In this document: positions 365 through 33,264 of the stretch, piece by piece
Position numbering within the stretch: the stretch's first letter is position 1
How the letters are laid out: every line of letters begins with the position of its first letter
IMG/VR virus record: IMGVR_UViG_3300042261_002385
Coordinates: 62,001-126,000 of that record
DNA: 64,000 bases
Direction: 5' to 3' (one strand)
Position numbers and translations under genes: made by a program
The notes under the pieces: model-generated
Databases searched by the model: none
Told to the model about the DNA's origin: nothing
Seen by the model: only the letters and a program-made list of their open reading frames with translations

Positions 365-934
365 ATGAAACTATTTTTATTTTTGTTCTTACTTATTAGT
401 CTAAATGTTTTTAGTCAACACTCGTTTGAAATATGTGAAAATTCAAATACGTTTACATATTCAACCACAATTGACTTAAACGGAACAGTAGAATGGTTTT
501 TAAACGGTAGTTCAATTGGTCAGGGTCTTTCAATTGATATCACATATGATGAACCTGGAGAATTTCAATTAGTAGCAATGGGTTATAACGATTTAGGTTG
601 TCCAGGAACACCACAAGTTTTAGATATTATAGTTACTCAATGTGATCCACTTATTTATTGGGTTCCTAATTCATTCACACCTGATGGAAATGAATTTAAT
701 CAAACTTGGGGTCCTATATTGACAAGCGGTATTTCAGTTAATAATTTTTCACTAACAATTTATAATAGATGGGGAGCTATCATCTGGGAGTCCAAAGATG
801 TCAATACTAAATGGGATGGAACATATGGAGGTTTTTTAGTTCCAGATGGAACATACTCTTGGATTATGAAATTAGATATGATAGACAATGATGGTAAAAA
901 ATTAATTACCGGTCACGTTACAATCGTTAGATAA
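365..934 (+). CDS. Secreted protein with gliding-motility-associated C-terminal (T9SS type B sorting) domain
   Basis: N-terminal signal peptide; C-terminal VPNSFTPDGN..N..W...IYNRWG..IWES...WDGTY.G..VPDGTY...GHVTIVR. Confidence 0.85.
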   Translation: MKLFLFLFLLISLNVFSQHSFEICENSNTFTYSTTIDLNGTVEWFLNGSSIGQGLSIDITYDEPGEFQLVAMGYNDLGCPGTPQVLDIIVTQCDPLIYWVPNSFTPDGNEFNQTWGPILTSGISVNNFSLTIYNRWGAIIWESKDVNTKWDGTYGGFLVPDGTYSWIMKLDMIDNDGKKLITGHVTIVR

Positions 935-1011: not shown

Positions 1012-1338
1012 TTAATGACTATGTATTACATTTTCTATTTTCTCATACAGTTTTATTTTCGGTAATACACCAACTTGTCTATCAACTACTTCACCATTTT
1101 TAAAAAAGATTATTGTAGGAATTCCTCTTACCCCATATTTATCAGGACTGATTGGATTCTCATCAATGTTTACTTTATAAACCACAATTTTTTCTTCTAA
1201 ATCATTTGAAGCTTCTTCTAATGCTGGAGCTAATGCTTTACAAGGATTACACCAATCGGCCCAAAAATCGACTAAAATTAATTTATCTGAACTTTTAATT
1301 ATATCTTGAAAGTTATCATCTGTTATACTTGCTACCAT
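1012..1338 (-). CDS. trxA: Thioredoxin
   Basis: DFWADWCNPCK active site, GIPT motif. Confidence 0.92.
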   Translation of the reverse strand: MVASITDDNFQDIIKSSDKLILVDFWADWCNPCKALAPALEEASNDLEEKIVVYKVNIDENPISPDKYGVRGIPTIIFFKNGEVVDRQVGVLPKIKLYEKIENVIHSH

Positions 1339-1369
1339 ATCTAAATTTTTTCTTTTATATATTTAATTT

Positions 1370-1458
1370 TGGTACTTCTGGTCGGACTCGAACCGACACG
1401 GACACAATGTCCAAGGGATTTTAAGTCCCTCGCGTGCTACCAATTTCGCCACAGAAGC
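1370..1458 (-). tRNA. tRNA-Leu (TAA)
   Basis: AGGGA-CTTAAAA-TCCCT arm, long variable arm, encoded CCA. Confidence 0.93.
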
Positions 1459-1464
1459 TTGTTG

Positions 1465-1547
1465 TACCCTGGGAGAGACTCGAACTCTCACGCCTTTCGG
1501 CACCAGATCCTAAATCTGGCGTGTGCTACCAATTTCACCACCAAGGT
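1465..1547 (-). tRNA. tRNA-Leu (TAG)
   Basis: CCAGA-TTTAGGA-TCTGG arm, long variable arm. Confidence 0.93.
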
Positions 1548-1557
1548 AAGTAATTTG

Positions 1558-1631
1558 AGCATCCTGCCAGATTCGAACTGGCGTCTCTGGGTTACAAATC
1601 CAGAATAATTGACCAACTATACGAAGGATGC
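1558..1631 (-). tRNA. tRNA-Thr (TGT)
   Basis: GCATCCT/AGGATGC acceptor; CTGGA-TTTGTAA-CCCAG arm. Confidence 0.85.
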
Positions 1632-1638
1632 AATTTTG

Positions 1639-1712
1639 AGACACTGGTCGGATTCGAACCGACATACCACAGTTTTGCAGACTGGGACCTAAAGCCATTC
1701 AGACACAGTGTC
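1639..1712 (-). tRNA. tRNA-Cys (GCA)
   Basis: CAGT-CTGCAAA-ACTG arm, U73. Confidence 0.9.
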
Positions 1713-1718
1713 GTTTTG

Positions 1719-1793
1719 TTGGAATGATAGGACTTGAACCTACGACCTCCACGGTATCAGCGTGGCGCTCTCGACCAACTGAGCTACATTCCA
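1719..1793 (-). tRNA. tRNA-Ile (GAT)
   Basis: CCACG-CTGATAC-CGTGG arm. Confidence 0.92.
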
Positions 1794-1800
1794 ATTTTTG

Positions 1801-1865
1801 AGGTCAGTATGGGTCTCGAACCCATGACTCGCTTGCGTCCCACTATGAAGCCTTTTATAGTGACC
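1801..1865 (-). ncRNA. Short tRNA-like RNA or pseudo-tRNA without a recognisable anticodon arm
   Basis: GGTCA/TGACC acceptor and ATGGG-TTCGAGA-CCCAT T arm intact; middle part is not a cloverleaf. Confidence 0.5.
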
Positions 1866-1874
1866 AACCATTTG

Positions 1875-1945
1875 TACCCCGAAGTGGGTTCGAACCACTG
1901 CCATCTCCATGTAAAAGAGATACGCTACCATTACGCCATCGGGGC
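1875..1945 (-). tRNA. tRNA-Val (TAC)
   Basis: TCTCT-TTTACAT-GGAGA arm. Confidence 0.9.
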
Positions 1946-1953
1946 TTTTTTTG

Positions 1954-2025
1954 CGGACTGAGAGAATTACGATATCTCGACCTCAACCTTAACAGGGTTT
2001 TGCTCTGCCTCTGAGCTACCAGTCC
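1954..2025 (-). tRNA. tRNA-Asn (GTT), atypical T loop ATCGTAA
   Basis: AACC-CTGTTAA-GGTT arm, G73. Confidence 0.85.
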
Positions 2026-2030
2026 TTTTG

Positions 2031-2112
2031 TACCGAGAGAGAGACTCGAACTCTCACGCCTTTCGAACACCGGCTTCTTAGACCGGCGTGTCTACCATTC
2101 CACCACCTCGGC
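2031..2112 (-). tRNA. tRNA-Leu (AAG)
   Basis: CCGGT-CTAAGAA-GCCGG arm, long variable arm, A73. Confidence 0.9.
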
Positions 2113-2121
2113 ATTTATTCG

Positions 2122-2194
2122 TAGCTCCTACTGGATTCGAACCAGTATCTTCGCTTTAGAAGAGCGACGTCCTGTCCAATTGAACGAAGGAGCC
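2122..2194 (-). tRNA. tRNA-Arg (TCT)
   Basis: TCGCT-CTTCTAA-AGCGA arm. Confidence 0.9.
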
Positions 2195-2205
2195 ATATTA
2201 TTTTG

Positions 2206-2290
2206 TCGGTAGAGTGGGATTTGAACCCACGTCGTGATTTCTCACCTAGTGTATCAGACTAGTCCCTGAAGACCGCTCGGGTATCTACCG
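2206..2290 (-). tRNA. tRNA with Ile (GAT) anticodon and a long variable arm
   Basis: CGGTAGA/TCTACCG acceptor; CTAGT-CTGATAC-ACTAG arm; GTGA-GAAA-TCAC variable arm. Confidence 0.85.
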
Positions 2291-2824
2291 TAATCTTTCT
2301 AACCTTTTTTCTTCTTCTATATTATAATGTATTTCCCCATGGCAATTTCTACACACTAAAATACATTTATCAACTTCATTTTTTAATTTTTCAAAAGAAT
2401 GAGTTTTCCCACTTACTGAAAAATCTTTTTCTTTTGGGTTTCTATGATGAAATTCTAAAGATGATATACATTTATTATATCCACATAATTCACATTCACC
2501 ACCTTTATATTCAACTAGTCTAATCTTAACTCTTCTTCTCCATTCAATTACACTTTGAGAATTAGATTTTGATTCACTATAACTTCTATCTTTATACTTT
2601 TTGACAGTACTTATAGAAACGTTAAACTTTTCTGAAGCTTCTTTTATTGTATGTGTTTTACAATAGTTTTTTAACTCTTCTATATCAAATCTTCTTTCAG
2701 AATTTAATCCATATCTTTTACAATGATAACTAATTGTTGATTTTGATATGTTTAATTCTTTTTTTATTTCATCATAACTTTTACCTTCTTTTCTTAATTT
2801 TATTACTTTATCTTTAGTTTCCAT
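2285..2824 (-). CDS. HTH-containing HNH endonuclease (free-standing homing endonuclease-like)
   Basis: Two HTH-like segments, then CELCG...LEFHH...CILVCRNCHGEIH. Confidence 0.8.
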   Translation of the reverse strand: METKDKVIKLRKEGKSYDEIKKELNISKSTISYHCKRYGLNSERRFDIEELKNYCKTHTIKEASEKFNVSISTVKKYKDRSYSESKSNSQSVIEWRRRVKIRLVEYKGGECELCGYNKCISSLEFHHRNPKEKDFSVSGKTHSFEKLKNEVDKCILVCRNCHGEIHYNIEEEKRLERLR

Positions 2825-2888
2825 AGGTCTTAATTATTTTATGTTAAATATTAAAAATTAAAACCTTTTTAACCAAAGTGGTTAATTG

Positions 2889-2963
2889 CGGACTTGATAG
2901 GATTCGAACCTACTATCTTCTGCTTAACAGGCAGTAGCTTATGACCACTTAAGCTTCAAGTCC
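2889..2963 (-). tRNA. tRNA-Asn (GTT)
   Basis: CTGC-CTGTTAA-GCAG arm, G73. Confidence 0.9.
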
Positions 2964-2984
2964 TTTTATTAACTATATCAAAAC

Positions 2985-3015
2985 AAAAAACCCTCAGATT
3001 TTCATCTGAGGGTTC
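2985..3015 (-). terminator. Intrinsic terminator (attenuator 1) upstream of tRNA cluster 1
   Basis: GAACCCTCAGAT-GAAA-ATCTGAGGGTTT followed by a U tract. Confidence 0.9.
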
Positions 3016-3045
3016 GTGTTATATTTAGTTATTATACGTCACATT

Positions 3046-3159
3046 TTACGAGACAAATTTTCTAAATAGATAGGAACCCTCAGAAGGTCTAATATTACAT
3101 AACGTAATATTCACCACATTGAGTGTCAGGTTCATCATATTTGTCGTATTTGTTCTCAT
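3046..3159 (-). CDS. Leader peptide 1, MRTNTTNMMNLTLNVVNITLCNIRPSEGSYLFRKFVS
   Basis: 37-aa ORF; first 24 codons use only the amino acids of the cluster-1 tRNAs; contains TCTGAGGGTTC, complementary to the terminator 5' arm. Confidence 0.85.
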   Translation of the reverse strand: MRTNTTNMMNLTLNVVNITLCNIRPSEGSYLFRKFVS

Positions 3160-3216
3160 TGTTGTTATATATTATAAATTATTAGTCTCTTTTGACTTTT
3201 TTGTCATTATTTTATA

Positions 3217-3248
3217 CAAATTTAAATAAAAGTTTTAATTCTACCAAA
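3217..3248 (-). promoter_or_regulatory. Bacteroidota-type housekeeping promoter
   Basis: TTTG-N20-TAAATTTG upstream of leader 1. Confidence 0.75.
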
Positions 3249-3259
3249 TTTAATCTAAA

Positions 3260-4615
3260 TTATTTTACTGGTGTCTCAGTTTTTTCACCAGGCTTAGCAA
3301 CTTCTGGTTTTTCACCAGGTTTCACAGGTGTCTGTTCTACAGGTTTTTCACCAGGCTTAGTCTCACTTTCTTTATGACCAGGTTTCAAATGATGAATTGT
3401 GTGATAAACGTGATAAATAGCAAATCCTATAGCAGCAACTGTAAGTAAAACTTTTATTGTTTTTCCAATTGGATCAGTCTCAGCATACAAATTAAAAGCG
3501 GCTAAAAACCATTTTTTCATATCCATAGCTGCTTCCATTCCCGGAAAAGGTGTAGCTCCTACAAGTAAACAAACATCACCAACTATACCAACTAAAGCAC
3601 CTACAATAGCACCTAAAGCTACAAATTTGAATGGACCGGGTCCACCAGCCCATTTAGATATCTTAGAAACAAAAGTAAGAGAAGCGTTTGTAACAACTTC
3701 ACCTACTAGTTCTGCAACTTTAACAATCAGTCCAAAAAAAGAAGATAAAACTCTAAGAATAAGTCTTCCCCACCATATTAGTTTTTTTCCAGTAGTTACC
3801 TCAGCATCTGGACTTTTTTCAATAAAACTCTTAAACCAATCAAGTAAAGAGTCGAATGCTGAAGACTTAACAGCCTTCACAACCTCACCTTCTTTAAGTA
3901 GTTGATAATCATAAAAATGTTTGATTAAATCATCACTCTCCGTATGTTCAATATATGATGAACTTTCTTCTACCTGATTCTCTGTCTCTTGTAGTTCTTT
4001 AAGTGTGGTTGATTCTATATTTCCTTCTCCAGATTGTAATGTAGCTGAAACTTTATTACCTAAATTAGGATTTATTTGGTTAGATTGTAATGCATCTTTT
4101 TTTTCATCACCAGTTCTTAAAAAGTTAAAAACACTTTTCAAATTCGGAATTTCTTGTTCAACTGTTTTCTTATCAGTAGATTCAATTTTTTTAGCTATAG
4201 CATCTTTTTTATCAACAGATAGCTTCTTTCCAAGATTAAGAGCTCCATTTAACATCCCCAAGAAAACATTCTTACAAAAAGTCATGATACCTTTTACAAA
4301 CCAAGAAATACCATCAATAATTTTCTTAACACGCTCTTTAAATGAATTTACAAATTTCTCTCCTTTATCTTTGACATAAGCAACTGCTTTATCTAAAAAC
4401 TGCCATTCTTCTTTTAATAGGTTGAATTTGGATTCTAAAAGTTCATTTTGGATAAACTTTTTTTCAGTATTATCAAAAATTTCAGATTTTAAACATAAAT
4501 TCCAAAAATTATCTGACAGTTCTTCATAAATTTGACCTTTTATTATAGAAGCCTGTTTATTTGCATGTTTTTTTTGTTCTTTAACAAAAGATTTATAATT
4601 TCTTACATAACTCAT
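3260..4615 (-). CDS. Hypothetical membrane protein with C-terminal KPGEKP repeats
   Basis: Long ORF with hydrophobic C-terminal helices; ATG at 4615 preferred. Confidence 0.7.
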   Translation of the reverse strand: MSYVRNYKSFVKEQKKHANKQASIIKGQIYEELSDNFWNLCLKSEIFDNTEKKFIQNELLESKFNLLKEEWQFLDKAVAYVKDKGEKFVNSFKERVKKIIDGISWFVKGIMTFCKNVFLGMLNGALNLGKKLSVDKKDAIAKKIESTDKKTVEQEIPNLKSVFNFLRTGDEKKDALQSNQINPNLGNKVSATLQSGEGNIESTTLKELQETENQVEESSSYIEHTESDDLIKHFYDYQLLKEGEVVKAVKSSAFDSLLDWFKSFIEKSPDAEVTTGKKLIWWGRLILRVLSSFFGLIVKVAELVGEVVTNASLTFVSKISKWAGGPGPFKFVALGAIVGALVGIVGDVCLLVGATPFPGMEAAMDMKKWFLAAFNLYAETDPIGKTIKVLLTVAAIGFAIYHVYHTIHHLKPGHKESETKPGEKPVEQTPVKPGEKPEVAKPGEKTETPVK

Positions 4616-4653
4616 ATTTGTAAACAACTTTTTGTTATATATTAAATACCCGA

Positions 4654-4818
4654 TTTATTTTTCTGAGCCTTTAATAATTTCCAATTCTCAACATCTCTTT
4701 CCATAAACTTTCTTATCCTTTTAGAGAAATTCATTGAGTTTTCATCACAAAATTGTTTATATTCTTCTAATAATTTTTCAGGGATTCTAATTGAAATCAT
4801 TTTATCTTTGGTTGCCAT
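4654..4818 (-). CDS. Ribbon-helix-helix (CopG/Arc-like) DNA-binding protein, 54 aa (absent from the ORF track)
   Basis: MATKDKMISIRIPEKLLEEYKQFCDENSMNFSKRIRKFMERDV...: beta strand ISIRI plus two helices. Confidence 0.75.
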
Positions 4819-5425: not shown

Positions 5426-6163
5426 TTATTTTAATTTTATCAAAATTGGTAAATGGTCAGAAAGAGAATTTCTATTTCCTTTGTAAGGATAAACTAAAAC
5501 TTTGCTCTCGACAATTGTGTACTTTTTTTCAACAAAAAAATGATCATAATTATTTTCTGAAACAGAACCATCTCTTTTAAGAGACGTTCCTAAACCACAT
5601 AGTGGTGAATTAAAGTTTTTTAACATAGGAACATAAACTAGATGTTTACAGCTTAAATTGAAGTCTCCACAAATCAAACCATCGGTATATTGATATAATT
5701 TAGAAACTTCGTTTTGAGGAGTTTTGCTTGTTGGAACCAAATGAACTTCTCTAATCACTAAGTCTTTTTTATTAATTTTGAAAGACGCCACAAAAGGTTC
5801 TCTATCAATTGAGTCCTGTAAAGAAGCATCTAATTTAGAATAATTTAATGTTATTGATTTTCTATAAAGATAAGCATATCTTTCAGCACCTTCCCCTGTA
5901 GTTCTTGGTGAAATTACATAATTATAATCTAATATTTTTGCCATTTTCATAATACAAGAGTCACCATAAGGACCAGTGATGACCTCTTGAATAGCTACTA
6001 TGTCAGCACCTGATGATTTAATTACAGTTGTTAATCCAGTAATGACCGAATCTCTTTTAAATTTAGTTTCACCTAAATTTTGTATGTTCCAAGAAAGGAT
6101 TGTTTGTGAATAAGATATGTATGATAATAAGATAATTATAAATAAGAAAATGTTTTTCATCAA
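5426..6163 (-). CDS. Secreted endonuclease/exonuclease/phosphatase (DNase I-like)
   Basis: Signal peptide; SWNI, AIQEV, GDFN, YDH, SDHLP motifs. Confidence 0.9.
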   Translation of the reverse strand: MMKNIFLFIIILLSYISYSQTILSWNIQNLGETKFKRDSVITGLTTVIKSSGADIVAIQEVITGPYGDSCIMKMAKILDYNYVISPRTTGEGAERYAYLYRKSITLNYSKLDASLQDSIDREPFVASFKINKKDLVIREVHLVPTSKTPQNEVSKLYQYTDGLICGDFNLSCKHLVYVPMLKNFNSPLCGLGTSLKRDGSVSENNYDHFFVEKKYTIVESKVLVYPYKGNRNSLSDHLPILIKLK

Positions 6164-6530: not shown

Positions 6531-6547
6531 TCATTATATTATTTTTG

Positions 6548-6620
6548 AGCGAGAGATGAGGTTCGAACTCACGACCCCCACCTTGGCAAGGTGGCGCTCT
6601 ACCAGCTGAGCTACTCTCGC
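6548..6620 (-). tRNA. tRNA-Gly (GCC)
   Basis: CCACC-TTGCCAA-GGTGG arm, U73. Confidence 0.93.
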
Positions 6621-6630
6621 TTATTTGATG

Positions 6631-6706
6631 TGGACCAGATGGGAATCGAACCCACCACACCTACCTTGCAAGGGTAAGTCGCCGAAGCCTTGGAACATGC
6701 TAGCCC
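6631..6706 (-). tRNA. tRNA-Ala (TGC)
   Basis: G3:U70 pair; TTACC-CTTGCAA-GGTAG arm; atypical D arm. Confidence 0.88.
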
Positions 6707-6710
6707 GTAG

Positions 6711-6782
6711 TGCGGGTAACCAGAATCGAACTGACATCACCGACTTGGAAGGCCGGTGTAATAACCATTATACGATACCCGC
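6711..6782 (-). tRNA. tRNA-Gly (TCC)
   Basis: CCGGC-CTTCCAA-GTCGG arm. Confidence 0.92.
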
Positions 6783-6793
6783 ATGTATTTCTG

Positions 6794-6874
6794 TCGGCAA
6801 GGTGGGATTCGAACCCACGTTTTCAACTTCCCGCTACGTGTATAGAATGTATAAGATTCCAACGGTACTTGCCG
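6794..6874 (-). tRNA. Non-canonical tRNA-like RNA with a TAT (Ile AUA) anticodon-like loop
   Basis: Perfect CGGCAAG/CTTGCCG acceptor and T arm; GGAAT-CTTATAC-ATTCT hairpin sits where the D arm should be. Confidence 0.6.
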
Positions 6875-6875
6875 A

Positions 6876-6909
6876 AATAAAAAAACCCAGTCCTTTTGAG
6901 ACTGGGTTT
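6876..6909 (-). terminator. Intrinsic terminator (attenuator 2)
   Basis: AAACCCAGTCT-CAAAA-GGACTGGGTTT plus U tract, directly upstream of cluster 2. Confidence 0.88.
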
Positions 6910-6930
6910 ATAAATATGTAAAGTCAAATA

Positions 6931-7014
6931 TTACATAACATAACTCAGTCTATAGACTTGACGCCCCGCGCCTGTCGCTATAAATCCAACTGATATGTTT
7001 GTAAAATTTTTCAT
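6931..7014 (-). CDS. Leader peptide 2, MKNFTNISVGFIATGAGRQVYRLSYVM
   Basis: ATA, GGA, ATA, GCG, GGC, GCG, GGG control codons; AGACTGAGTT antiterminator. Confidence 0.78.
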   Translation of the reverse strand: MKNFTNISVGFIATGAGRQVYRLSYVM

Positions 7015-7252: not shown

Positions 7253-7284
7253 CAAAGATAAGGTAACTTTTCTAATCTACCAAA
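7253..7284 (-). promoter_or_regulatory. Bacteroidota-type promoter between attenuator 3 and tRNA-Glu
   Basis: TTTG-N20-TATCTTTG. Confidence 0.7.
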
Positions 7285-7293
7285 TCTTTAAAT

Positions 7294-7323
7294 AAAAAAA
7301 CCCAATCTTTTCAGACTGGGTTT
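7294..7323 (-). terminator. Intrinsic terminator (attenuator 3)
   Basis: AAACCCAGTCT-GAAA-AGATTGGGTTT plus U tract. Confidence 0.88.
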
Positions 7324-7343
7324 GTTAAAAGTAAATCAAATAT

Positions 7344-7415
7344 TTACAACACGCAAACTAGTCCGATTGGATTACTACCCTCGGCTTCATAATAATATGT
7401 TGTTATCATTTTCAT
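7344..7415 (-). CDS. Leader peptide 3, MKMITTYYYEAEGSNPIGLVCVL
   Basis: TAT-TAT-TAT-GAA-GCC-GAG run upstream of tRNA-Glu and tRNA-Tyr. Confidence 0.82.
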   Translation of the reverse strand: MKMITTYYYEAEGSNPIGLVCVL

Positions 7416-7436: not shown

Positions 7437-7509
7437 TAGCGGGGGTAGGACTCGAACCTACGACCTCTAGGTTATGAGCCTAGCGAGCTACCAACTACTC
7501 CACCCCACA
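7437..7509 (-). tRNA. Initiator-type tRNA-fMet (CAT)
   Basis: U1:U72 mismatch, fMet-like D arm, CTAGG-CTCATAA-CCTAG arm. Confidence 0.88.
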
Positions 7510-12510: not shown

Positions 12511-12517
12511 AATTTAG

Positions 12518-12603
12518 CGGAGAACAGAGGAATTGAACCCCACACAAATGAACGTGCAACTCGCTTAGCAGGCGGTCCTAATCACCAGATTAGTTTATTC
12601 TCC
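12518..12603 (-). tRNA. tRNA-Ser (GCT), 8/4 fold
   Basis: CGC-CTGCTAA-GCG; CTAATC-TGGT-GATTAG D arm; G73. Confidence 0.82.
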
Positions 12604-12609
12604 ATTTAG

Positions 12610-12693
12610 CGGAAGAAGTAGGTGTCGATCCCAATACCTTTCAGTACCCACAGTTTTCAAGACTGGGTTGCAGGCCGCTGCAATTCATCTTCC
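12610..12693 (-). tRNA. tRNA-Ser (TGA), 8/4 fold
   Basis: CAGT-CTTGAAA-ACTG; TTGCAG-CGGC-CTGCAA D arm; G73. Confidence 0.82.
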
Positions 12694-12699
12694 AATTTG

Positions 12700-12772
12700 T
12701 GGTTCTAGAAGTATTCGAAACCTCACTTGATCGTTCGTAGCGACCTGTCCTGTCCAATTAGACGATAGAACC
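12700..12772 (-). tRNA. tRNA-Arg (ACG)
   Basis: GGTCG-CTACGAA-CGATC arm. Confidence 0.9.
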
Positions 12773-12780
12773 AAATTTAA

Positions 12781-12908
12781 CGGGGATGGTTGGACTCGAA
12801 CCAACGACCTTATAATTTCAAAATATACGAAGTAACTCTTTCAATCAACACTCTTACGAGGTAAAGTTTCAAAAGAGATAGTTTTCTCTACCACTGAGCT
12901 AAATCCCC
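12781..12908 (-). ncRNA. 128-nt tRNA-like RNA with a large structured insertion in the anticodon domain
   Basis: Near-canonical acceptor, D arm (GCTCAGTGGTAGAG) and T arm (GTTGG-TTCGAGT-CCAAC) flank about 55 extra nt. Confidence 0.7.
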
Positions 12909-12919
12909 AATAACATTTG

Positions 12920-12994
12920 TGACTCCGGTGGGACTCGAACCCACATATCCCTGATTAAGAGTCAGGTCCGGAAACCAATTACGGATACGAAGTC
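12920..12994 (-). tRNA. tRNA-Lys (CTT)
   Basis: CCTGA-CTCTTAA-TCAGG arm. Confidence 0.88.
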
Positions 12995-12999
12995 ATTTG

Positions 13000-13087
13000 T
13001 GCACCCAGAAGGACTCGAACCTTCAACGGACTTTCGTCTACCCCTCGCATTAAAAGTGCGATGCTCTACCAATTGAGCCATAGGTGC
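13000..13087 (-). tRNA. tRNA-Lys (TTT) with long variable arm
   Basis: TCGCA-CTTTTAA-TGCGA arm; 20-nt variable region containing GAC-GAAA-GTC. Confidence 0.85.
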
Positions 13088-13100
13088 TTAATTACCTTAG

Positions 13101-13173
13101 TGACCCCGGCGAGAATCGAACTCGCGACCCCCTGGTTAAAAGCCAGGTGCTCTACCTACTAAGCTACGAAGTC
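13101..13173 (-). tRNA. tRNA-Lys (TTT)
   Basis: CCTGG-CTTTTAA-CCAGG arm. Confidence 0.93.
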
Positions 13174-13216
13174 AAATTTTTTCTATGTGATGACTTATAA
13201 CTTAGTAAGCCATCAC

Positions 13217-13240
13217 TTAGCGTTTTCGTTTAGTTTCCAT
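13217..13240 (-). CDS. Candidate mini leader ORF METKRKR
   Basis: ATG GAA ACT AAA CGA AAA CGC TAA after an A-rich tract, followed by an 11-bp hairpin, upstream of the Lys/Arg tRNAs. Confidence 0.45.
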   Translation of the reverse strand: METKRKR

Positions 13241-13258
13241 TTTCTTTTTTATTTTTAG

Positions 13259-13329
13259 CACGTCGCCTAGGAATTGAACCCAGCCATCGAGGTTTTGGAG
13301 ACCTGACCGACACCTTGTCTGTGCGACGT
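13259..13329 (-). tRNA. tRNA-Trp (CCA), short D arm
   Basis: AGGT-CTCCAAA-ACCT arm, G73. Confidence 0.82.
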
Positions 13330-13336
13330 ATGTTTG

Positions 13337-13410
13337 GGTGAACGACGGGTTACGATCCCGCTACCTCTGGCTTCACAAACCAGCACTCTTCCGATTGAGC
13401 TACATTCACC
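13337..13410 (-). tRNA. tRNA-His (GTG)
   Basis: G-1:C73 pair; CTGGT-TTGTGAA-GCCAG arm; T loop ATCGTAA. Confidence 0.9.
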
Positions 13411-13415
13411 ATATA

Positions 13416-13487
13416 AACCCCACTTCACCAGGTTAACGGACTGGCTGCCATATGGGAGTGGGGGTCTCCTGTTATTCCAGGACTCCG
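13416..13487 (-). ncRNA. GC-rich structured RNA of unknown class, 3' of tRNA-Phe
   Basis: TCCTG/CAGGA, CCCCACT/AGTGGGG and CCAG/CTGG stems; possible ACGGA/TCCGT pseudoknot; strand inferred from context. Confidence 0.5.
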
Positions 13488-13560
13488 TGGAATGGGTGGG
13501 TATCGAGCCCACTCCTCTGGATTTTCAGTCCAGCGCAATTACCTAATCTGCCACCATTCC
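13488..13560 (-). tRNA. tRNA-Phe (GAA)
   Basis: CTGGA-CTGAAAA-TCCAG arm. Confidence 0.9.
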
Positions 13561-13573
13561 AATTTTTTTAAAT

Positions 13574-13607
13574 AAAAAAACCCGAACTTCTTTCGAGGTT
13601 CGGGTTT
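13574..13607 (-). terminator. Intrinsic terminator (attenuator 4)
   Basis: AAACCCGAACCTC-GAAA-GAAGTTCGGGTTT plus U tract. Confidence 0.9.
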
Positions 13608-13630
13608 AAATTATATTGTCTTTTATAAGT

Positions 13631-13732
13631 TTACACTTCTAAATTTGAGCAATACTCTTTTAGTACCGAACCAGTGGTGCTAAACCACGAAGTCGATTTA
13701 CTAAATGTGCTATGTTTGCGAATTGCTCTCAT
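13631..13732 (-). CDS. Leader peptide 4, MRAIRKHSTFSKSTSWFSTTGSVLKEYCSNLEV
   Basis: R/K/H/S/F/W-rich control region; GGTTCGG antiterminator. Confidence 0.85.
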   Translation of the reverse strand: MRAIRKHSTFSKSTSWFSTTGSVLKEYCSNLEV

Positions 13733-13789: not shown

Positions 13790-13821
13790 CAAATGTAGAT
13801 AAAAGTTTTTAATCTACCAAA
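13790..13821 (-). promoter_or_regulatory. Bacteroidota-type promoter upstream of leader 4
   Basis: TTTG-N20-TACATTTG; closely similar to 3217-3248. Confidence 0.75.
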
Positions 13822-14387: not shown

Positions 14388-14813
14388 TTATCCTATTTTG
14401 GTTTTGACAACTTCTGATACAATTTTCTTATCAACCGGTAGTTGCGCGAATTCTTTCATTATTTGACCTATCTGTGTTATGCCGTTTGCTATGAGTTCGT
14501 CTACTTTTGATTCAATCTCTAACTTGGTCATTTGTTTTGGTAGATAAGATTCGATTATTGCTAACTCAGCACAAGCTTGAACTATATCTTCACCTTTACC
14601 ATCAATTGGTGCTAATGATTTAATCGTTTCTTTCAAAGATTTTGATGCTTTGATTAAAATTTTTAAAACATCTTCATCGGAAAGATTTTCGACTCCAGTA
14701 TTTTTTTCGGCAGTTTGAATTTCTCCTTTGACTACAGAAAGTAAATTTTTGGTAACAGTATTCTTCATTTTGAATGCTGTCATGTAGTCTTTGTTAATTT
14801 GTTCTTTTATCAT
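14388..14813 (-). CDS. yqeY: GatB/YqeY domain protein
   Basis: IKEQINKDYMTAFK...ELAIIESYLPKQM...IGQIMK. Confidence 0.88.
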   Translation of the reverse strand: MIKEQINKDYMTAFKMKNTVTKNLLSVVKGEIQTAEKNTGVENLSDEDVLKILIKASKSLKETIKSLAPIDGKGEDIVQACAELAIIESYLPKQMTKLEIESKVDELIANGITQIGQIMKEFAQLPVDKKIVSEVVKTKIG

Positions 14814-33233: not shown

Positions 33234-33264
33234 AAAAAACCTCAGATTTTTCTGAGGTTTTTTT
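33234..33264 (+). terminator. Intrinsic terminator, bidirectional
   Basis: AAACCTCAGA-TTTT-TCTGAGGTTT with flanking A/T tracts. Confidence 0.8.

What the first reader, a model, noticed from the sequence alone, without database searches (positions are those of the whole stretch)
2985..3159. Attenuator 1: first 24 leader codons are all decodable by its own tRNA cluster
Codons 1-24 are ATG AGA ACA AAT ACG ACA AAT ATG ATG AAC CTG ACA CTC AAT GTG GTG AAT ATT ACG TTA TGT AAT ATT AGA. They use exactly the 8 amino acids of the 12 downstream tRNAs, and match at isoacceptor level: AGA-TCT, CTG-TAG, CTC-AAG, TTA-TAA, ACA/ACG-TGT, GTG-TAC, ATT-GAT, TGT-GCA. The match ends where the 11-nt perfect antiterminator TCTGAGGGTTC (3074-3084) begins. 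An AATATTAC/GTAATATT hairpin (3091-3111) could act as a pause element.
Basis: seen in the sequence. Interest (0 to 1): 0.92.

Follow-up and report, generated by a model that had tools for sequence, protein, structure and literature searches.

The report
Codon-matched attenuator before phage tRNA genes
A short translated leader with a terminator/antiterminator switch sits in front of a giant phage's tRNA gene array and is written almost entirely in codons read by those tRNAs, which suggests the phage raises tRNA output when those tRNAs run short; I found no published report of attenuation used this way.

Summary
The sequence facts hold. On the minus strand, a 37-codon ORF (3159..3046) is followed by an intrinsic terminator (3015..2985). 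An 11-nt in-ORF copy of the terminator's 3' arm (3084..3074) can pair with its 5' arm. Codons 2-24 use only N, T, M, L, V, I, R and C. This is the only run of 10 or more such codons in any frame of the 64 kb window (run of 26; genes reach at most 8).

One correction: ARAGORN and Rfam find 11 downstream tRNAs for 7 amino acids, not 12 for 8. No tRNA-Met lies in this array.

I found 31 distinct homologous leaders in huge-phage and metagenome contigs. The antiterminator covaries with four different terminator stems. The N-terminal codons vary freely but stay inside the set (404 of 423). The downstream arrays carry only N, R, L, V, I, T, C and M tRNAs, with one Asp exception.

Other arrays carry leaders of the same design: YYYEAE before Glu/Tyr, ATA/GGN/GCG before Ile(TAT)/Gly/Ala, PQDQDQ before Gln/Asp/Pro.

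Best reading: a trp/thr-like ribosome-mediated attenuator that controls tRNA genes. It has no Rfam family, and seven literature searches found no report. It is a new variant of a known kind, untested experimentally.

The parts
3217..3248 (-). Promoter-like motif: TTTG, 20 nt, then TAAATTTG (Bacteroidota -33/-7 type), extended to TTTGGTAGA...TTTG
   Evidence: The motif occurs only 3 times in 64 kb, each at a tRNA module, against 0.03 expected. It is conserved upstream of nearly all homologous leaders. The match to the Bacteroidota promoter consensus rests on established knowledge and was not tested.
3184..3197 (-). Small 5' stem-loop (AGTC/GACT) between promoter and start codon
   Evidence: Present in the MFE fold. 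Relatives have a different small hairpin at the same place. Its role is unknown.
3046..3159 (-). Leader ORF: 37 codons plus TAA
   Evidence: ATG and reading frame are kept in 28 distinct full leaders. The start-to-hairpin distance varies only in whole codons (14, 16, 17, 18), whereas the stop-to-terminator spacer varies from 21 to 34 nt.
3088..3156 (-). Sensor codons 2-24: only N, T, M, L, V, I, R, C
   Evidence: 21 of 23 codons are decodable by the 11 downstream tRNAs under strict wobble; the other 2 are ATG.
3120..3133 (-). Segment 1 (GAACC..CTCA, codons 9-14): pairs with segment 2 in the leader-only fold
   Evidence: MFE folds. 79% of cells are paired across the family, but there is no significant covariation.
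3086..3115 (-). Conserved hairpin GGT-AATATTAC/loop/GTAATATT-ACC (core 3091..3111). It forms the apex of the 1:2 stem and is a possible pause hairpin.
   Evidence: RNAalifold consensus. It is almost invariant in 27 sequences found by a peptide-level search; the only synonymous variation is at the first loop base.
3074..3084 (-). Segment 2 = antiterminator strand TCTGAGGGTTC (codons 26-29)
   Evidence: Exact 11-nt complement of segment 3. The 2:3 duplex is -20.5 kcal/mol against -6.9 +/- 1.8 for shuffles. It covaries with the terminator.
3004..3015 (-). Segment 3 = terminator 5' arm GAACCCTCAGAT
2985..2999 (-). Segment 4 = terminator 3' arm plus T-run
   Evidence: the hairpin is -17.3 kcal/mol.
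1370..2963 (-). Regulated tRNA array: Asn, [HTH-HNH ORF insert 2824..2285], Ile(gat), Arg(tct), Leu(aag), Asn, Val(tac), [tRNA-like remnant], Ile(gat), Cys, Thr(tgt), Leu(tag), Leu(taa)
   Evidence: ARAGORN and Rfam; Pfam for the insert.

Best explanation
This is a ribosome-mediated (leader-peptide) transcription attenuator that controls a tRNA gene array of a huge phage that probably infects Bacteroidota.

Transcription starts at the conserved promoter at about 3248..3217. The nascent RNA carries a 37-codon ORF. Three outcomes are possible.
1. No ribosome is on the leader. Segment 1 (3133..3120) and the conserved hairpin fold onto segment 2 (3084..3074). The terminator 3:4 (3015..2985) then forms and RNA polymerase stops 22 nt before the first tRNA.
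2. A ribosome stalls within roughly codons 5-20. All of these codons are read by the kinds of tRNA encoded downstream. Segment 1 is held open, segment 2 stays free, and it pairs with segment 3 as segment 3 emerges (11 perfect pairs). The terminator cannot form and polymerase reads into the array.
3. Decoding is fast. The ribosome runs over segment 2 to the stop codon, the 2:3 pairing is missed, and transcription terminates.

The net effect is negative feedback. Shortage of charged Asn/Thr/Ile/Leu/Val/Arg/Cys(/Met) tRNAs raises synthesis of those same tRNAs.

Shown here: the elements, their conservation, the 2:3/3:4 covariation and the codon-to-tRNA correspondence. Inferred: that the ORF is translated, the stalling, the direction of regulation, and the 1:2 and pause roles.
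For: 1. Non-random codon set. It is the only run of 10 or more set codons in six frames of the 64 kb window (run of 26; genes reach at most 8; P about 3e-12).
2. Thirty-one distinct homologous leaders in LR745206.1, five other IMG/VR contigs and 27 metagenome contigs.
3. Antiterminator covariation. Four terminator stem classes each have a matching in-ORF copy at the same position: CCCTCAG, CCCAGATTC, CCCGATTC and CCCGAAC, plus the GAACCC to AAAACCC change. The 2:3 pairing has 92.6% of cells paired and 6 of 11 pairs with compensatory changes; 0 of 500 shuffles reach four of the five observed measures and 1 of 500 the fifth, and slid registers reach at most 56%. Own-versus-foreign terminator duplex energies are -17 to -20 against -7 to -13 kcal/mol. 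The z-scores against shuffles are -4.5 to -8.3 in all 27.
4. The peptide over segment 2 changes with the stem (PSEGS, PESGL, TEGSGF, RLRSGS). Selection there therefore acts on the RNA, not the peptide.
5. Upstream codons vary but stay in the set: 404 of 423, and most of the exceptions are Lys at codon 2. Of 57 variant codons, 55 stay in the set against 32.4 expected (P = 1e-11). After segment 2 begins, only 30% are in the set.
6. Downstream arrays in all complete loci carry only N, R, L, V, I, T, C and M tRNAs, with one Asp exception. Within the window, P = 2.8e-5 that all 11 fall in the leader's set.
7. Five further leader/array pairs of the same design match at isoacceptor level. For example, Ile is ATT here (tRNA GAT) but ATA in the Gly/Ala/Ile(TAT) module.
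8. Only in-frame length changes occur inside the ORF.
9. The leader-only fold sequesters segment 2 in nearly every member.
Against: - There is no experimental or transcriptomic evidence, and the host is uncultured.
- The stop codon lies 26 nt downstream of segment 2. A terminating ribosome would therefore not mask segment 2 as it does in trp. Termination under fast translation has to rely on timing or on refolding of 1:2.
- The 1:2 pairing has no significant covariation.
- The conserved hairpin is invariant, so covariation cannot prove its structure.
- The two internal ATG codons have no cognate tRNA in this window's array.
- An HTH-HNH ORF inserted after the first tRNA could carry its own promoter for the remaining ten tRNAs.
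- In the Glu/Tyr module of this window, the promoter motif lies after the terminator, so that attenuator can be bypassed.
- Antiterminators of the other leader types are individually weak (p = 0.01-0.2; combined 0.0012).
- The ribosome senses aminoacyl-tRNA, so tRNA shortage and amino-acid starvation cannot be told apart from sequence.
Confidence: 0.75

Rival explanations
1. The switch is the same, but it reports amino-acid starvation or a general slowdown of translation, as classical attenuators and erm-type leaders do. It would not report the abundance of the phage or host tRNAs. The match to the downstream tRNAs would then couple tRNA output to amino-acid supply.
For: Ribosomes sense charged tRNA only, which is established knowledge of trp, his and thr attenuation. 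The multi-amino-acid composition resembles the thr and ilv leaders. Nothing separates tRNA level from charging level.
Against: Making more tRNA does not relieve amino-acid starvation, so this regulatory logic is weaker. The isoacceptor-level choices fit tRNA species rather than amino acids. Examples are ATT against ATA for Ile in two modules, AGA here against CGC in the Arg(ACG) module, and the G-ending wobble codons ACG, CTG and GTG that are rare in phage genes.
Confidence: 0.12
2. The terminator/antiterminator switch is real but is set by a trans-acting factor. This could be an RNA-binding protein that binds the invariant hairpin, or direct tRNA binding as in a T-box. The ORF would be incidental.
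For: The hairpin at 3111..3091 is nearly invariant across the family, as protein-binding sites often are. The 1:2 pairing lacks covariation.
Against: This reading does not explain three observations. Codons 2-24 stay within the tRNA-matched set while varying. Indels in the ORF are only in-frame. Unrelated leaders in other modules are enriched in their own cognate codons. No T-box or other Rfam family matches.
Confidence: 0.07
3. The ORF encodes a functional micropeptide with its own terminator. The in-ORF copy of the terminator arm would be a relic of a duplication.
For: The core VVNITLCNIR is conserved at the amino-acid level, though this was forced by the search pattern.
Against: The in-ORF copy tracks four different terminator stems, which a relic would not do. 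The peptide over that stretch and the C-terminus are not conserved. The N-terminus conserves composition, not sequence. There is no Pfam hit.
Confidence: 0.04
4. A chance ORF and chance complementarity in AT-rich intergenic DNA.
For: None beyond the small size of the elements.
Against: with P values from 1e-5 to 1e-12, and conservation in 31 loci.
Confidence: 0.01

Closest known systems
Leader-peptide transcription attenuators of enterobacterial amino-acid operons (trp, his, leu, pheA, and especially the multi-amino-acid thr and ilvGMEDA leaders)
   Same: A short translated leader ORF is enriched in regulatory codons. An intrinsic terminator lies just before the regulated genes. An antiterminator (2:3) is mutually exclusive with the terminator (3:4), and an upstream segment can sequester it (1:2). 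Several amino acids are sensed at once, as in thr (Thr, Ile) and ilv (Leu, Val, Ile).
   Different: The regulated genes are tRNAs, not biosynthetic enzymes. Eight amino acids are sensed over about 23 consecutive codons. The stop codon lies downstream of segment 2 rather than before or within it. The element sits in a phage, with a Bacteroidota-type promoter and no Shine-Dalgarno sequence. There is no sequence or Rfam similarity.
pheST (and hisS in bacilli) leader-peptide attenuators in front of aminoacyl-tRNA synthetase genes (hisS: PMC2965389)
   Same: Ribosome-mediated attenuation is applied to a gene of the translation apparatus, with leader codons cognate to the product's specificity.
   Different: The product there is a synthetase for one amino acid. 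Here the product is an array of 11-19 tRNA genes for 7-8 amino acids.
T-box riboswitches
   Same: They couple read-through of an intrinsic terminator to the state of a specific tRNA through an antiterminator.
   Different: A T-box binds uncharged tRNA directly, through the Stem I specifier and the T-box bulge, and needs no translation. No T-box match was found here, and the element is an ORF under codon-level constraints.
Phage tRNA arrays in huge phages (Mahaphage/Lak clade; PMC7162821, PMC6784885)
   Same: Large tRNA complements in phages of 150-635 kb predicted to infect Bacteroidota. LR745206.1 (634,780 bp) carries the same leader.
   Different: Term searches of PMC7162821 found no mention of an attenuator or a leader. 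PMC6784885 was not read.

Membership tests
Ribosome-mediated (leader-peptide) transcription attenuator | Short ORF with start and stop codons in the transcribed leader, conserved as an ORF | tested here: met
   ORF 3159..3046. It is kept in 28 distinct full leaders with only whole-codon length changes.
Ribosome-mediated (leader-peptide) transcription attenuator | Regulatory codons cognate to the regulated function, enriched beyond background | tested here: met
   17 of 19 codons among codons 2-20 are decodable by the array, against a background of 0.30 (P = 1e-7). Run-length test. Family-wide, 404 of 423 codons stay in the set.
Ribosome-mediated (leader-peptide) transcription attenuator | Intrinsic terminator between the leader ORF and the regulated genes | tested here: met
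   A 12-bp GC-rich hairpin plus T6 at 3015..2985, 22 nt before the first tRNA. Six terminator pairs show compensatory changes.
Ribosome-mediated (leader-peptide) transcription attenuator | Antiterminator pairing mutually exclusive with the terminator, supported by covariation | tested here: met
   92.6% of cells paired, 6 of 11 pairs compensatory, and at most 1 of 500 shuffles reaches any observed measure.
Ribosome-mediated (leader-peptide) transcription attenuator | Anti-antiterminator or pause hairpin (1:2) overlapping the sensor codons | tested here: inconclusive
   Predicted in the MFE of nearly every member, but there is no significant covariation. The core hairpin is invariant.
Ribosome-mediated (leader-peptide) transcription attenuator | Stop codon placed so that a terminating ribosome masks segment 2 | tested here: not met
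   The stop at 3048..3046 lies 26 nt downstream of segment 2 (3074). This is read from the sequence; the ribosome footprint size is from established knowledge.
Ribosome-mediated (leader-peptide) transcription attenuator | Translation-dependent read-through shown experimentally | not testable with these tools
   Needs coupled transcription-translation or reporter assays.
Classical amino-acid operon attenuators (Rfam Trp/His/Leu/Thr/Phe leader families) | Match to the family covariance model; regulated genes are biosynthetic | tested here: not met
   His_leader scores 17.2 bits and Phe_leader 17.5 bits, against gathering scores of 49 and 55. The downstream genes are tRNAs.
T-box riboswitch | Stem I specifier loop and T-box antiterminator bulge (Rfam T-box model) | tested here: not met
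   No T-box hit even at E <= 10.

The most novel reading that the evidence does not exclude
The whole tRNA complement of this group of huge (Mahaphage-like) phages is split into at least five transcription modules. Each is gated by its own leader-peptide attenuator written in the codons of that module's tRNAs:
- N/T/I/L/V/R/C/M
- F/H/W/K/R/S
- I(ATA)/G/A
- E/Y
- Q/D/P

Together they would form a phage-encoded tRNA homeostat. It would measure decoding capacity codon group by codon group and top up only the limiting tRNAs. One possible use is replacing host tRNAs lost to shut-off or to anticodon-nuclease defences.
Probability: 0.5. Interest if true: 0.92.

Novelty: new variant of a known kind. 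Interest (0 to 1): 0.86.

Why it matters
Leader-peptide attenuation is a textbook mechanism. It is known for amino-acid biosynthesis and for a few synthetase genes, not for tRNA genes. Seven full-text literature searches and Rfam gave no precedent.

If real, it shows that huge phages do not merely carry tRNAs. They would regulate them by demand, with the ribosome itself as the sensor. The tRNA arrays would also be organised into codon-matched regulatory modules. That gives a concrete, testable answer to how and when phage tRNAs are expressed.

It would also supply compact natural parts (about 180 nt) that report the decoding capacity for chosen codon sets. And it extends ribosome-mediated attenuation to phages of Bacteroidota.

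Tried and rejected
- Megablast of 1300-4700 against GenBank phages found only LR745206.1, and only over the leader. The flanking 455-aa protein found nothing but its own contig.
- Rfam at gathering and at E <= 10 gave only sub-threshold, terminator-driven hits.
- The supposed 12th tRNA: the gap at 1873..1794 is called only at a very lax ARAGORN threshold, as a degenerate 66-nt 'Arg(acg)'. I rejected it as a functional tRNA-Met.
- The 1:2 pairing on a fixed alignment register showed no significant covariation. I keep it only as a thermodynamic prediction.
- Antiterminators of the other six leaders are individually weak (p = 0.01-0.21).
- L003 5660-6440, searched for a further leader, holds a protein-coding insert instead.
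- Pfam gave nothing for the leader peptide or for the upstream 455-aa protein.
- An arrest-peptide reading of NIRP (SecM-like) was considered and set aside. The Pro is replaced by Arg or Thr, or is absent, in L011, L027, L039 and L038.
- An alternative genetic code was considered. Leaders end in TAA or TGA, and the window's ORFs are long under code 11, so there is no sign of recoding.

Full report
**What is there**

The window is part of a 436-kb IMG/VR viral contig. The region is AT-rich, and all the features lie on the minus strand. Reading 5' to 3' on that strand:
- A long promoter-like motif at 3248..3217: TTTG, 20 nt, then TAAATTTG. This is the -33/-7 type known for Bacteroidota.
- A small stem-loop at 3197..3184.
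- A 37-codon ORF at 3159..3046.
- A 31-nt spacer.
- An intrinsic terminator: GAACCCTCAGAT, a GAAA loop, ATCTGAGGGTT and T6, at 3015..2985.
- The first tRNA 22 nt later (Asn, 2963..2888), followed by an inserted HTH-HNH ORF and ten more tRNAs down to 1370.

Inside the ORF, TCTGAGGGTTC (3084..3074, codons 26-29) is an exact copy of the terminator's 3' arm. It can therefore pair with the terminator's 5' arm. The 11-mer occurs nowhere else in the 64 kb. The hairpin AATATTAC/GTAATATT lies at 3111..3091. The folded region is much more stable than shuffles (z = -5.2).

**Check of the observation**

The 24 codons are as listed. The array's strict-wobble codon set plus ATG makes up 31.7% of codons in 38 long ORFs of the window. 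No gene has a run longer than 8. In all six frames of the window, the only run of 10 or more is this one, at 26. The naive probability of 23 in a row is 3e-12.

Two details are wrong.
- ARAGORN and Rfam agree on 11 tRNAs for 7 amino acids. The 80-nt gap at 1873..1794 is only a degenerate tRNA-like remnant.
- There is no tRNA-Met in this array, so the ATG codons are not covered here.

The sensor also favours G-ending or otherwise rare codons (ACG, CTG, CTC, GTG; 2.5-5.1 per thousand in genes). The array's tRNAs would read these by wobble.

**Relatives**

Megablast against GenBank phages hit one record, LR745206.1 (634,780 bp). The hit covers only window 2981-3266, which is exactly promoter to terminator, at 80% identity. 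A DNA pattern, and then a peptide-level search with the leader alignment, found more copies:
- five other IMG/VR contigs of 95-508 kb;
- 27 metagenome contigs.

This gives 31 distinct leaders. All have an ATG, the hairpin, an in-ORF segment 2, a stop codon 21-34 nt before a terminator, and a tRNA immediately after it. The start-to-hairpin distance changes only by whole codons (14, 16, 17 or 18).

**The antiterminator is under selection**

Most members have the CCCTCAG/CTGAGGG stem. Four members have other stems, and in each the in-ORF segment changes to match, at the same position:
- L004: CCCAGATTC with GAATCTGGG.
- L039: CCCGATTC with ATCGGGTTT.
- L038: GAACCCGAAC with GTTCGGGTTC.
- L035: AAAACCC with GGGTTTT.

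Supporting measurements:
- On the MAFFT alignment A2, which mis-registers L004 and is therefore conservative, the 2:3 pairing has 92.6% of cells paired. Six of 11 pairs carry compensatory changes. No shuffle in 500 reaches four of the five observed measures, and one in 500 reaches the fifth. Slid registers reach at most 56%.
- Duplex energies are -15 to -25 kcal/mol in all 27 sequences (z = -4.5 to -8.3 against dinucleotide shuffles). These are comparable to the terminator hairpins, at -11 to -19.
- Each leader prefers its own terminator class: -17 to -20 against -7 to -13 kcal/mol.
- The encoded peptide over this stretch changes accordingly (PSEGS, PESGL, TEGSGF, RLRSGS). The constraint is therefore on the RNA.

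**The ORF is under codon-class selection**

Upstream of the hairpin the peptide sequence is not conserved, but its composition is.
- Across 28 distinct leaders, 404 of 423 codons encode N, T, M, L, V, I, R or C. The exceptions are Lys (15 of 17 at codon 2) and two Ala at codon 3.
- Of 57 variant codons, 55 stay in the set, against 32.4 expected from random single-base neighbours (P = 1e-11).
- Downstream of codon 24, only 30% of codons are in the set.

In every locus with a complete array, the tRNAs that follow are exclusively N, R, L, V, I, T, C and M, with one Asp in L003. Arrays often end with tRNA-Met(CAT). This window's array looks like a shortened version that has lost its Met end. Within the window, the chance that all 11 array tRNAs fall in the leader's set is 2.8e-5.

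**The design recurs with other codon sets**

Each pair below reads leader first, then the tRNAs that follow its terminator.
- Window 13732..13631 (RKHStFSKStSWFS): Phe, His, Trp, Lys x3, Arg(ACG), Ser(TGA), Ser(GCT). Lower-case residues are non-cognate.
- Window 7014..6931 (ATA, GGA, ATA, GCG, GGC, GCG, GGG within 11 codons): Ile(TAT), Gly(TCC), Ala(TGC), Gly(GCC).
- Window 7415..7344 (YYYEAE): Glu and Tyr.
- L003 7197-7295 (PQDQDQ): Gln, Asp, Pro.
- LR745206.1: its own Glu/Tyr and Ile(TAT)/Gly/Ala leaders, with different sequences but the same codon blocks.

Some of the tRNAs are called only at relaxed ARAGORN thresholds.

- Own-set enrichment is 2.3- to 3.8-fold, and the correct pairing ranks first of 24 permutations.
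- Ile is ATT in this leader (tRNA GAT) and ATA in the other (tRNA TAT). The match is therefore at isoacceptor level.
- In each leader the cognate block ends just before the best partner of the terminator's 5' arm.
- Those partners are individually weak (p = 0.01-0.21; combined 0.0012).

Together the modules cover all 20 amino acids. The long promoter motif occurs three times in 64 kb, always at a tRNA module.

**Mechanism**

The leader alone folds so that segment 1 (3133..3120) and the conserved hairpin sequester segment 2, in nearly all members. This gives the classical four-segment logic.
- No ribosome, or a fast ribosome: 1:2 and 3:4 form, and transcription terminates.
- A ribosome stalled on roughly codons 5-20: segment 2 is free, 2:3 forms, and polymerase reads through.

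The set-restricted codons occupy the stretch upstream of segment 2. Stalling over most of that stretch would free segment 2. The restriction ends where stalling would no longer help.

The inferred output is negative feedback on the supply of the very tRNAs encoded downstream.

Weak points:
- The stop codon lies 26 nt beyond segment 2, unlike in trp.
- The 1:2 pairing shows no significant covariation.
- The hairpin's proposed pause role is untested.
- The HNH insert could uncouple ten of the tRNAs.
- The Glu/Tyr module here has the promoter after its terminator.
- tRNA shortage and amino-acid starvation cannot be separated by sequence.

**Comparison and novelty**

It works like the thr and ilv multi-amino-acid leader-peptide attenuators. 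Like pheST and hisS, it regulates a translation component. It matches no Rfam leader family or T-box. Seven full-text searches found no report of leader-peptide attenuation of tRNA genes or of attenuators in huge-phage tRNA arrays. The huge-phage survey reports up to 67 tRNAs per genome; term searches of it found no mention of an attenuator or a leader. I class it as a new variant of a known kind. It is well supported by comparative sequence evidence and awaits a direct test.

Noticed in passing
window 13732..13578 (-), then tRNAs 13560..12517: A second attenuator-like unit: promoter motif at 13821..13790, a 33-codon leader rich in R, K, H, S, F and W, and a terminator at 13607..13578. The array that follows is Phe, His, Trp, Lys x3, Arg(ACG), Ser x2. 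The 7-bp partner GGTTCGG pairs with the terminator's 5' arm (p = 0.01).
   Followed up: partly
window 7014..6883 (-), then tRNAs 6874..6547: A third unit, directly after tRNA-Tyr. The leader has ATA x2, GGA, GGC, GGG and GCG x2. It precedes a terminator and then Ile(TAT), Gly(TCC), Ala(TGC), Gly(GCC). Ile(TAT) and Ala are called only at a relaxed ARAGORN threshold.
   Followed up: partly
window 7415..7298 (-) and 7284..7253 (-): A fourth unit. A leader with YYYEAE follows tRNA-Met and precedes a terminator. Here the tRNA-module promoter motif lies after the terminator, directly before tRNA-Glu and tRNA-Tyr. In LR745206.1 the promoter precedes the homologous leader. The attenuator may be bypassed or rearranged in this phage.
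   Followed up: partly
L003 7197-7345, then tRNAs from 7358: A leader with PQDQDQ, a terminator, then tRNA-Gln, Asp and Pro. No such module was seen in the 64-kb window; it may lie elsewhere in the 436-kb contig.
   Followed up: partly
window 2824..2285 (-): A 179-aa ORF with two HTH motifs and a weak HNH match (homing-endonuclease-like) is inserted between the first tRNA (Asn) and the rest of the array. Its last codons overlap the next tRNA. Close relatives (L015, L017, L007) lack it.
   Followed up: partly
window 2290..2205 (-); also L007 310-395 and others: An 86-nt tRNA with a long variable arm (the type-II shape normally seen in Leu, Ser and Tyr tRNAs) but an Ile anticodon GAT. It is conserved in relatives.
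   Followed up: no
window 1873..1794 (-): A degenerate tRNA-like remnant between tRNA-Val and tRNA-Ile. Neither ARAGORN at default settings nor Rfam calls it.
   Followed up: yes
window 13329..13258, 12909..12780, 12689..12611, 12604..12517 (-): Non-canonical tRNAs missed at default settings: Trp(CCA), an intron-bearing or split tRNA of about 130 nt, Ser(TGA), and a Ser(GCT) that Rfam scores as tRNA-Sec (47.1 bits).
   Followed up: partly
all leader types (window 3159, 7014, 7415, 13732; L003 7197; L040 15030, 16082): Leaders of different codon specificity share an N-terminal MK(T/N)xN(T)NI-like start and an AACTTTT(T)A(A)TATATA motif 15-25 nt before the ATG. That motif also precedes tRNA-Met at 7509. 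This suggests the modules are paralogous, or that they share an initiation signal.
   Followed up: no
window 365..934 (+), 1338..1012 (-), 4818..4642 (-), 6163..5426 (-), 14813..14388 (-): Neighbouring genes: a protein with a CHU_C (type IX secretion sorting) domain, which points to a Bacteroidota host; thioredoxin; a CopG-like small protein; an endonuclease/exonuclease/phosphatase-family protein; and a YqeY/GatB-like protein.
   Followed up: partly
window 33234..33263: A perfect bidirectional terminator (AAAAAACCTCAGA / TCTGAGGTTTTTT) whose stem resembles that of attenuator 1.
   Followed up: no
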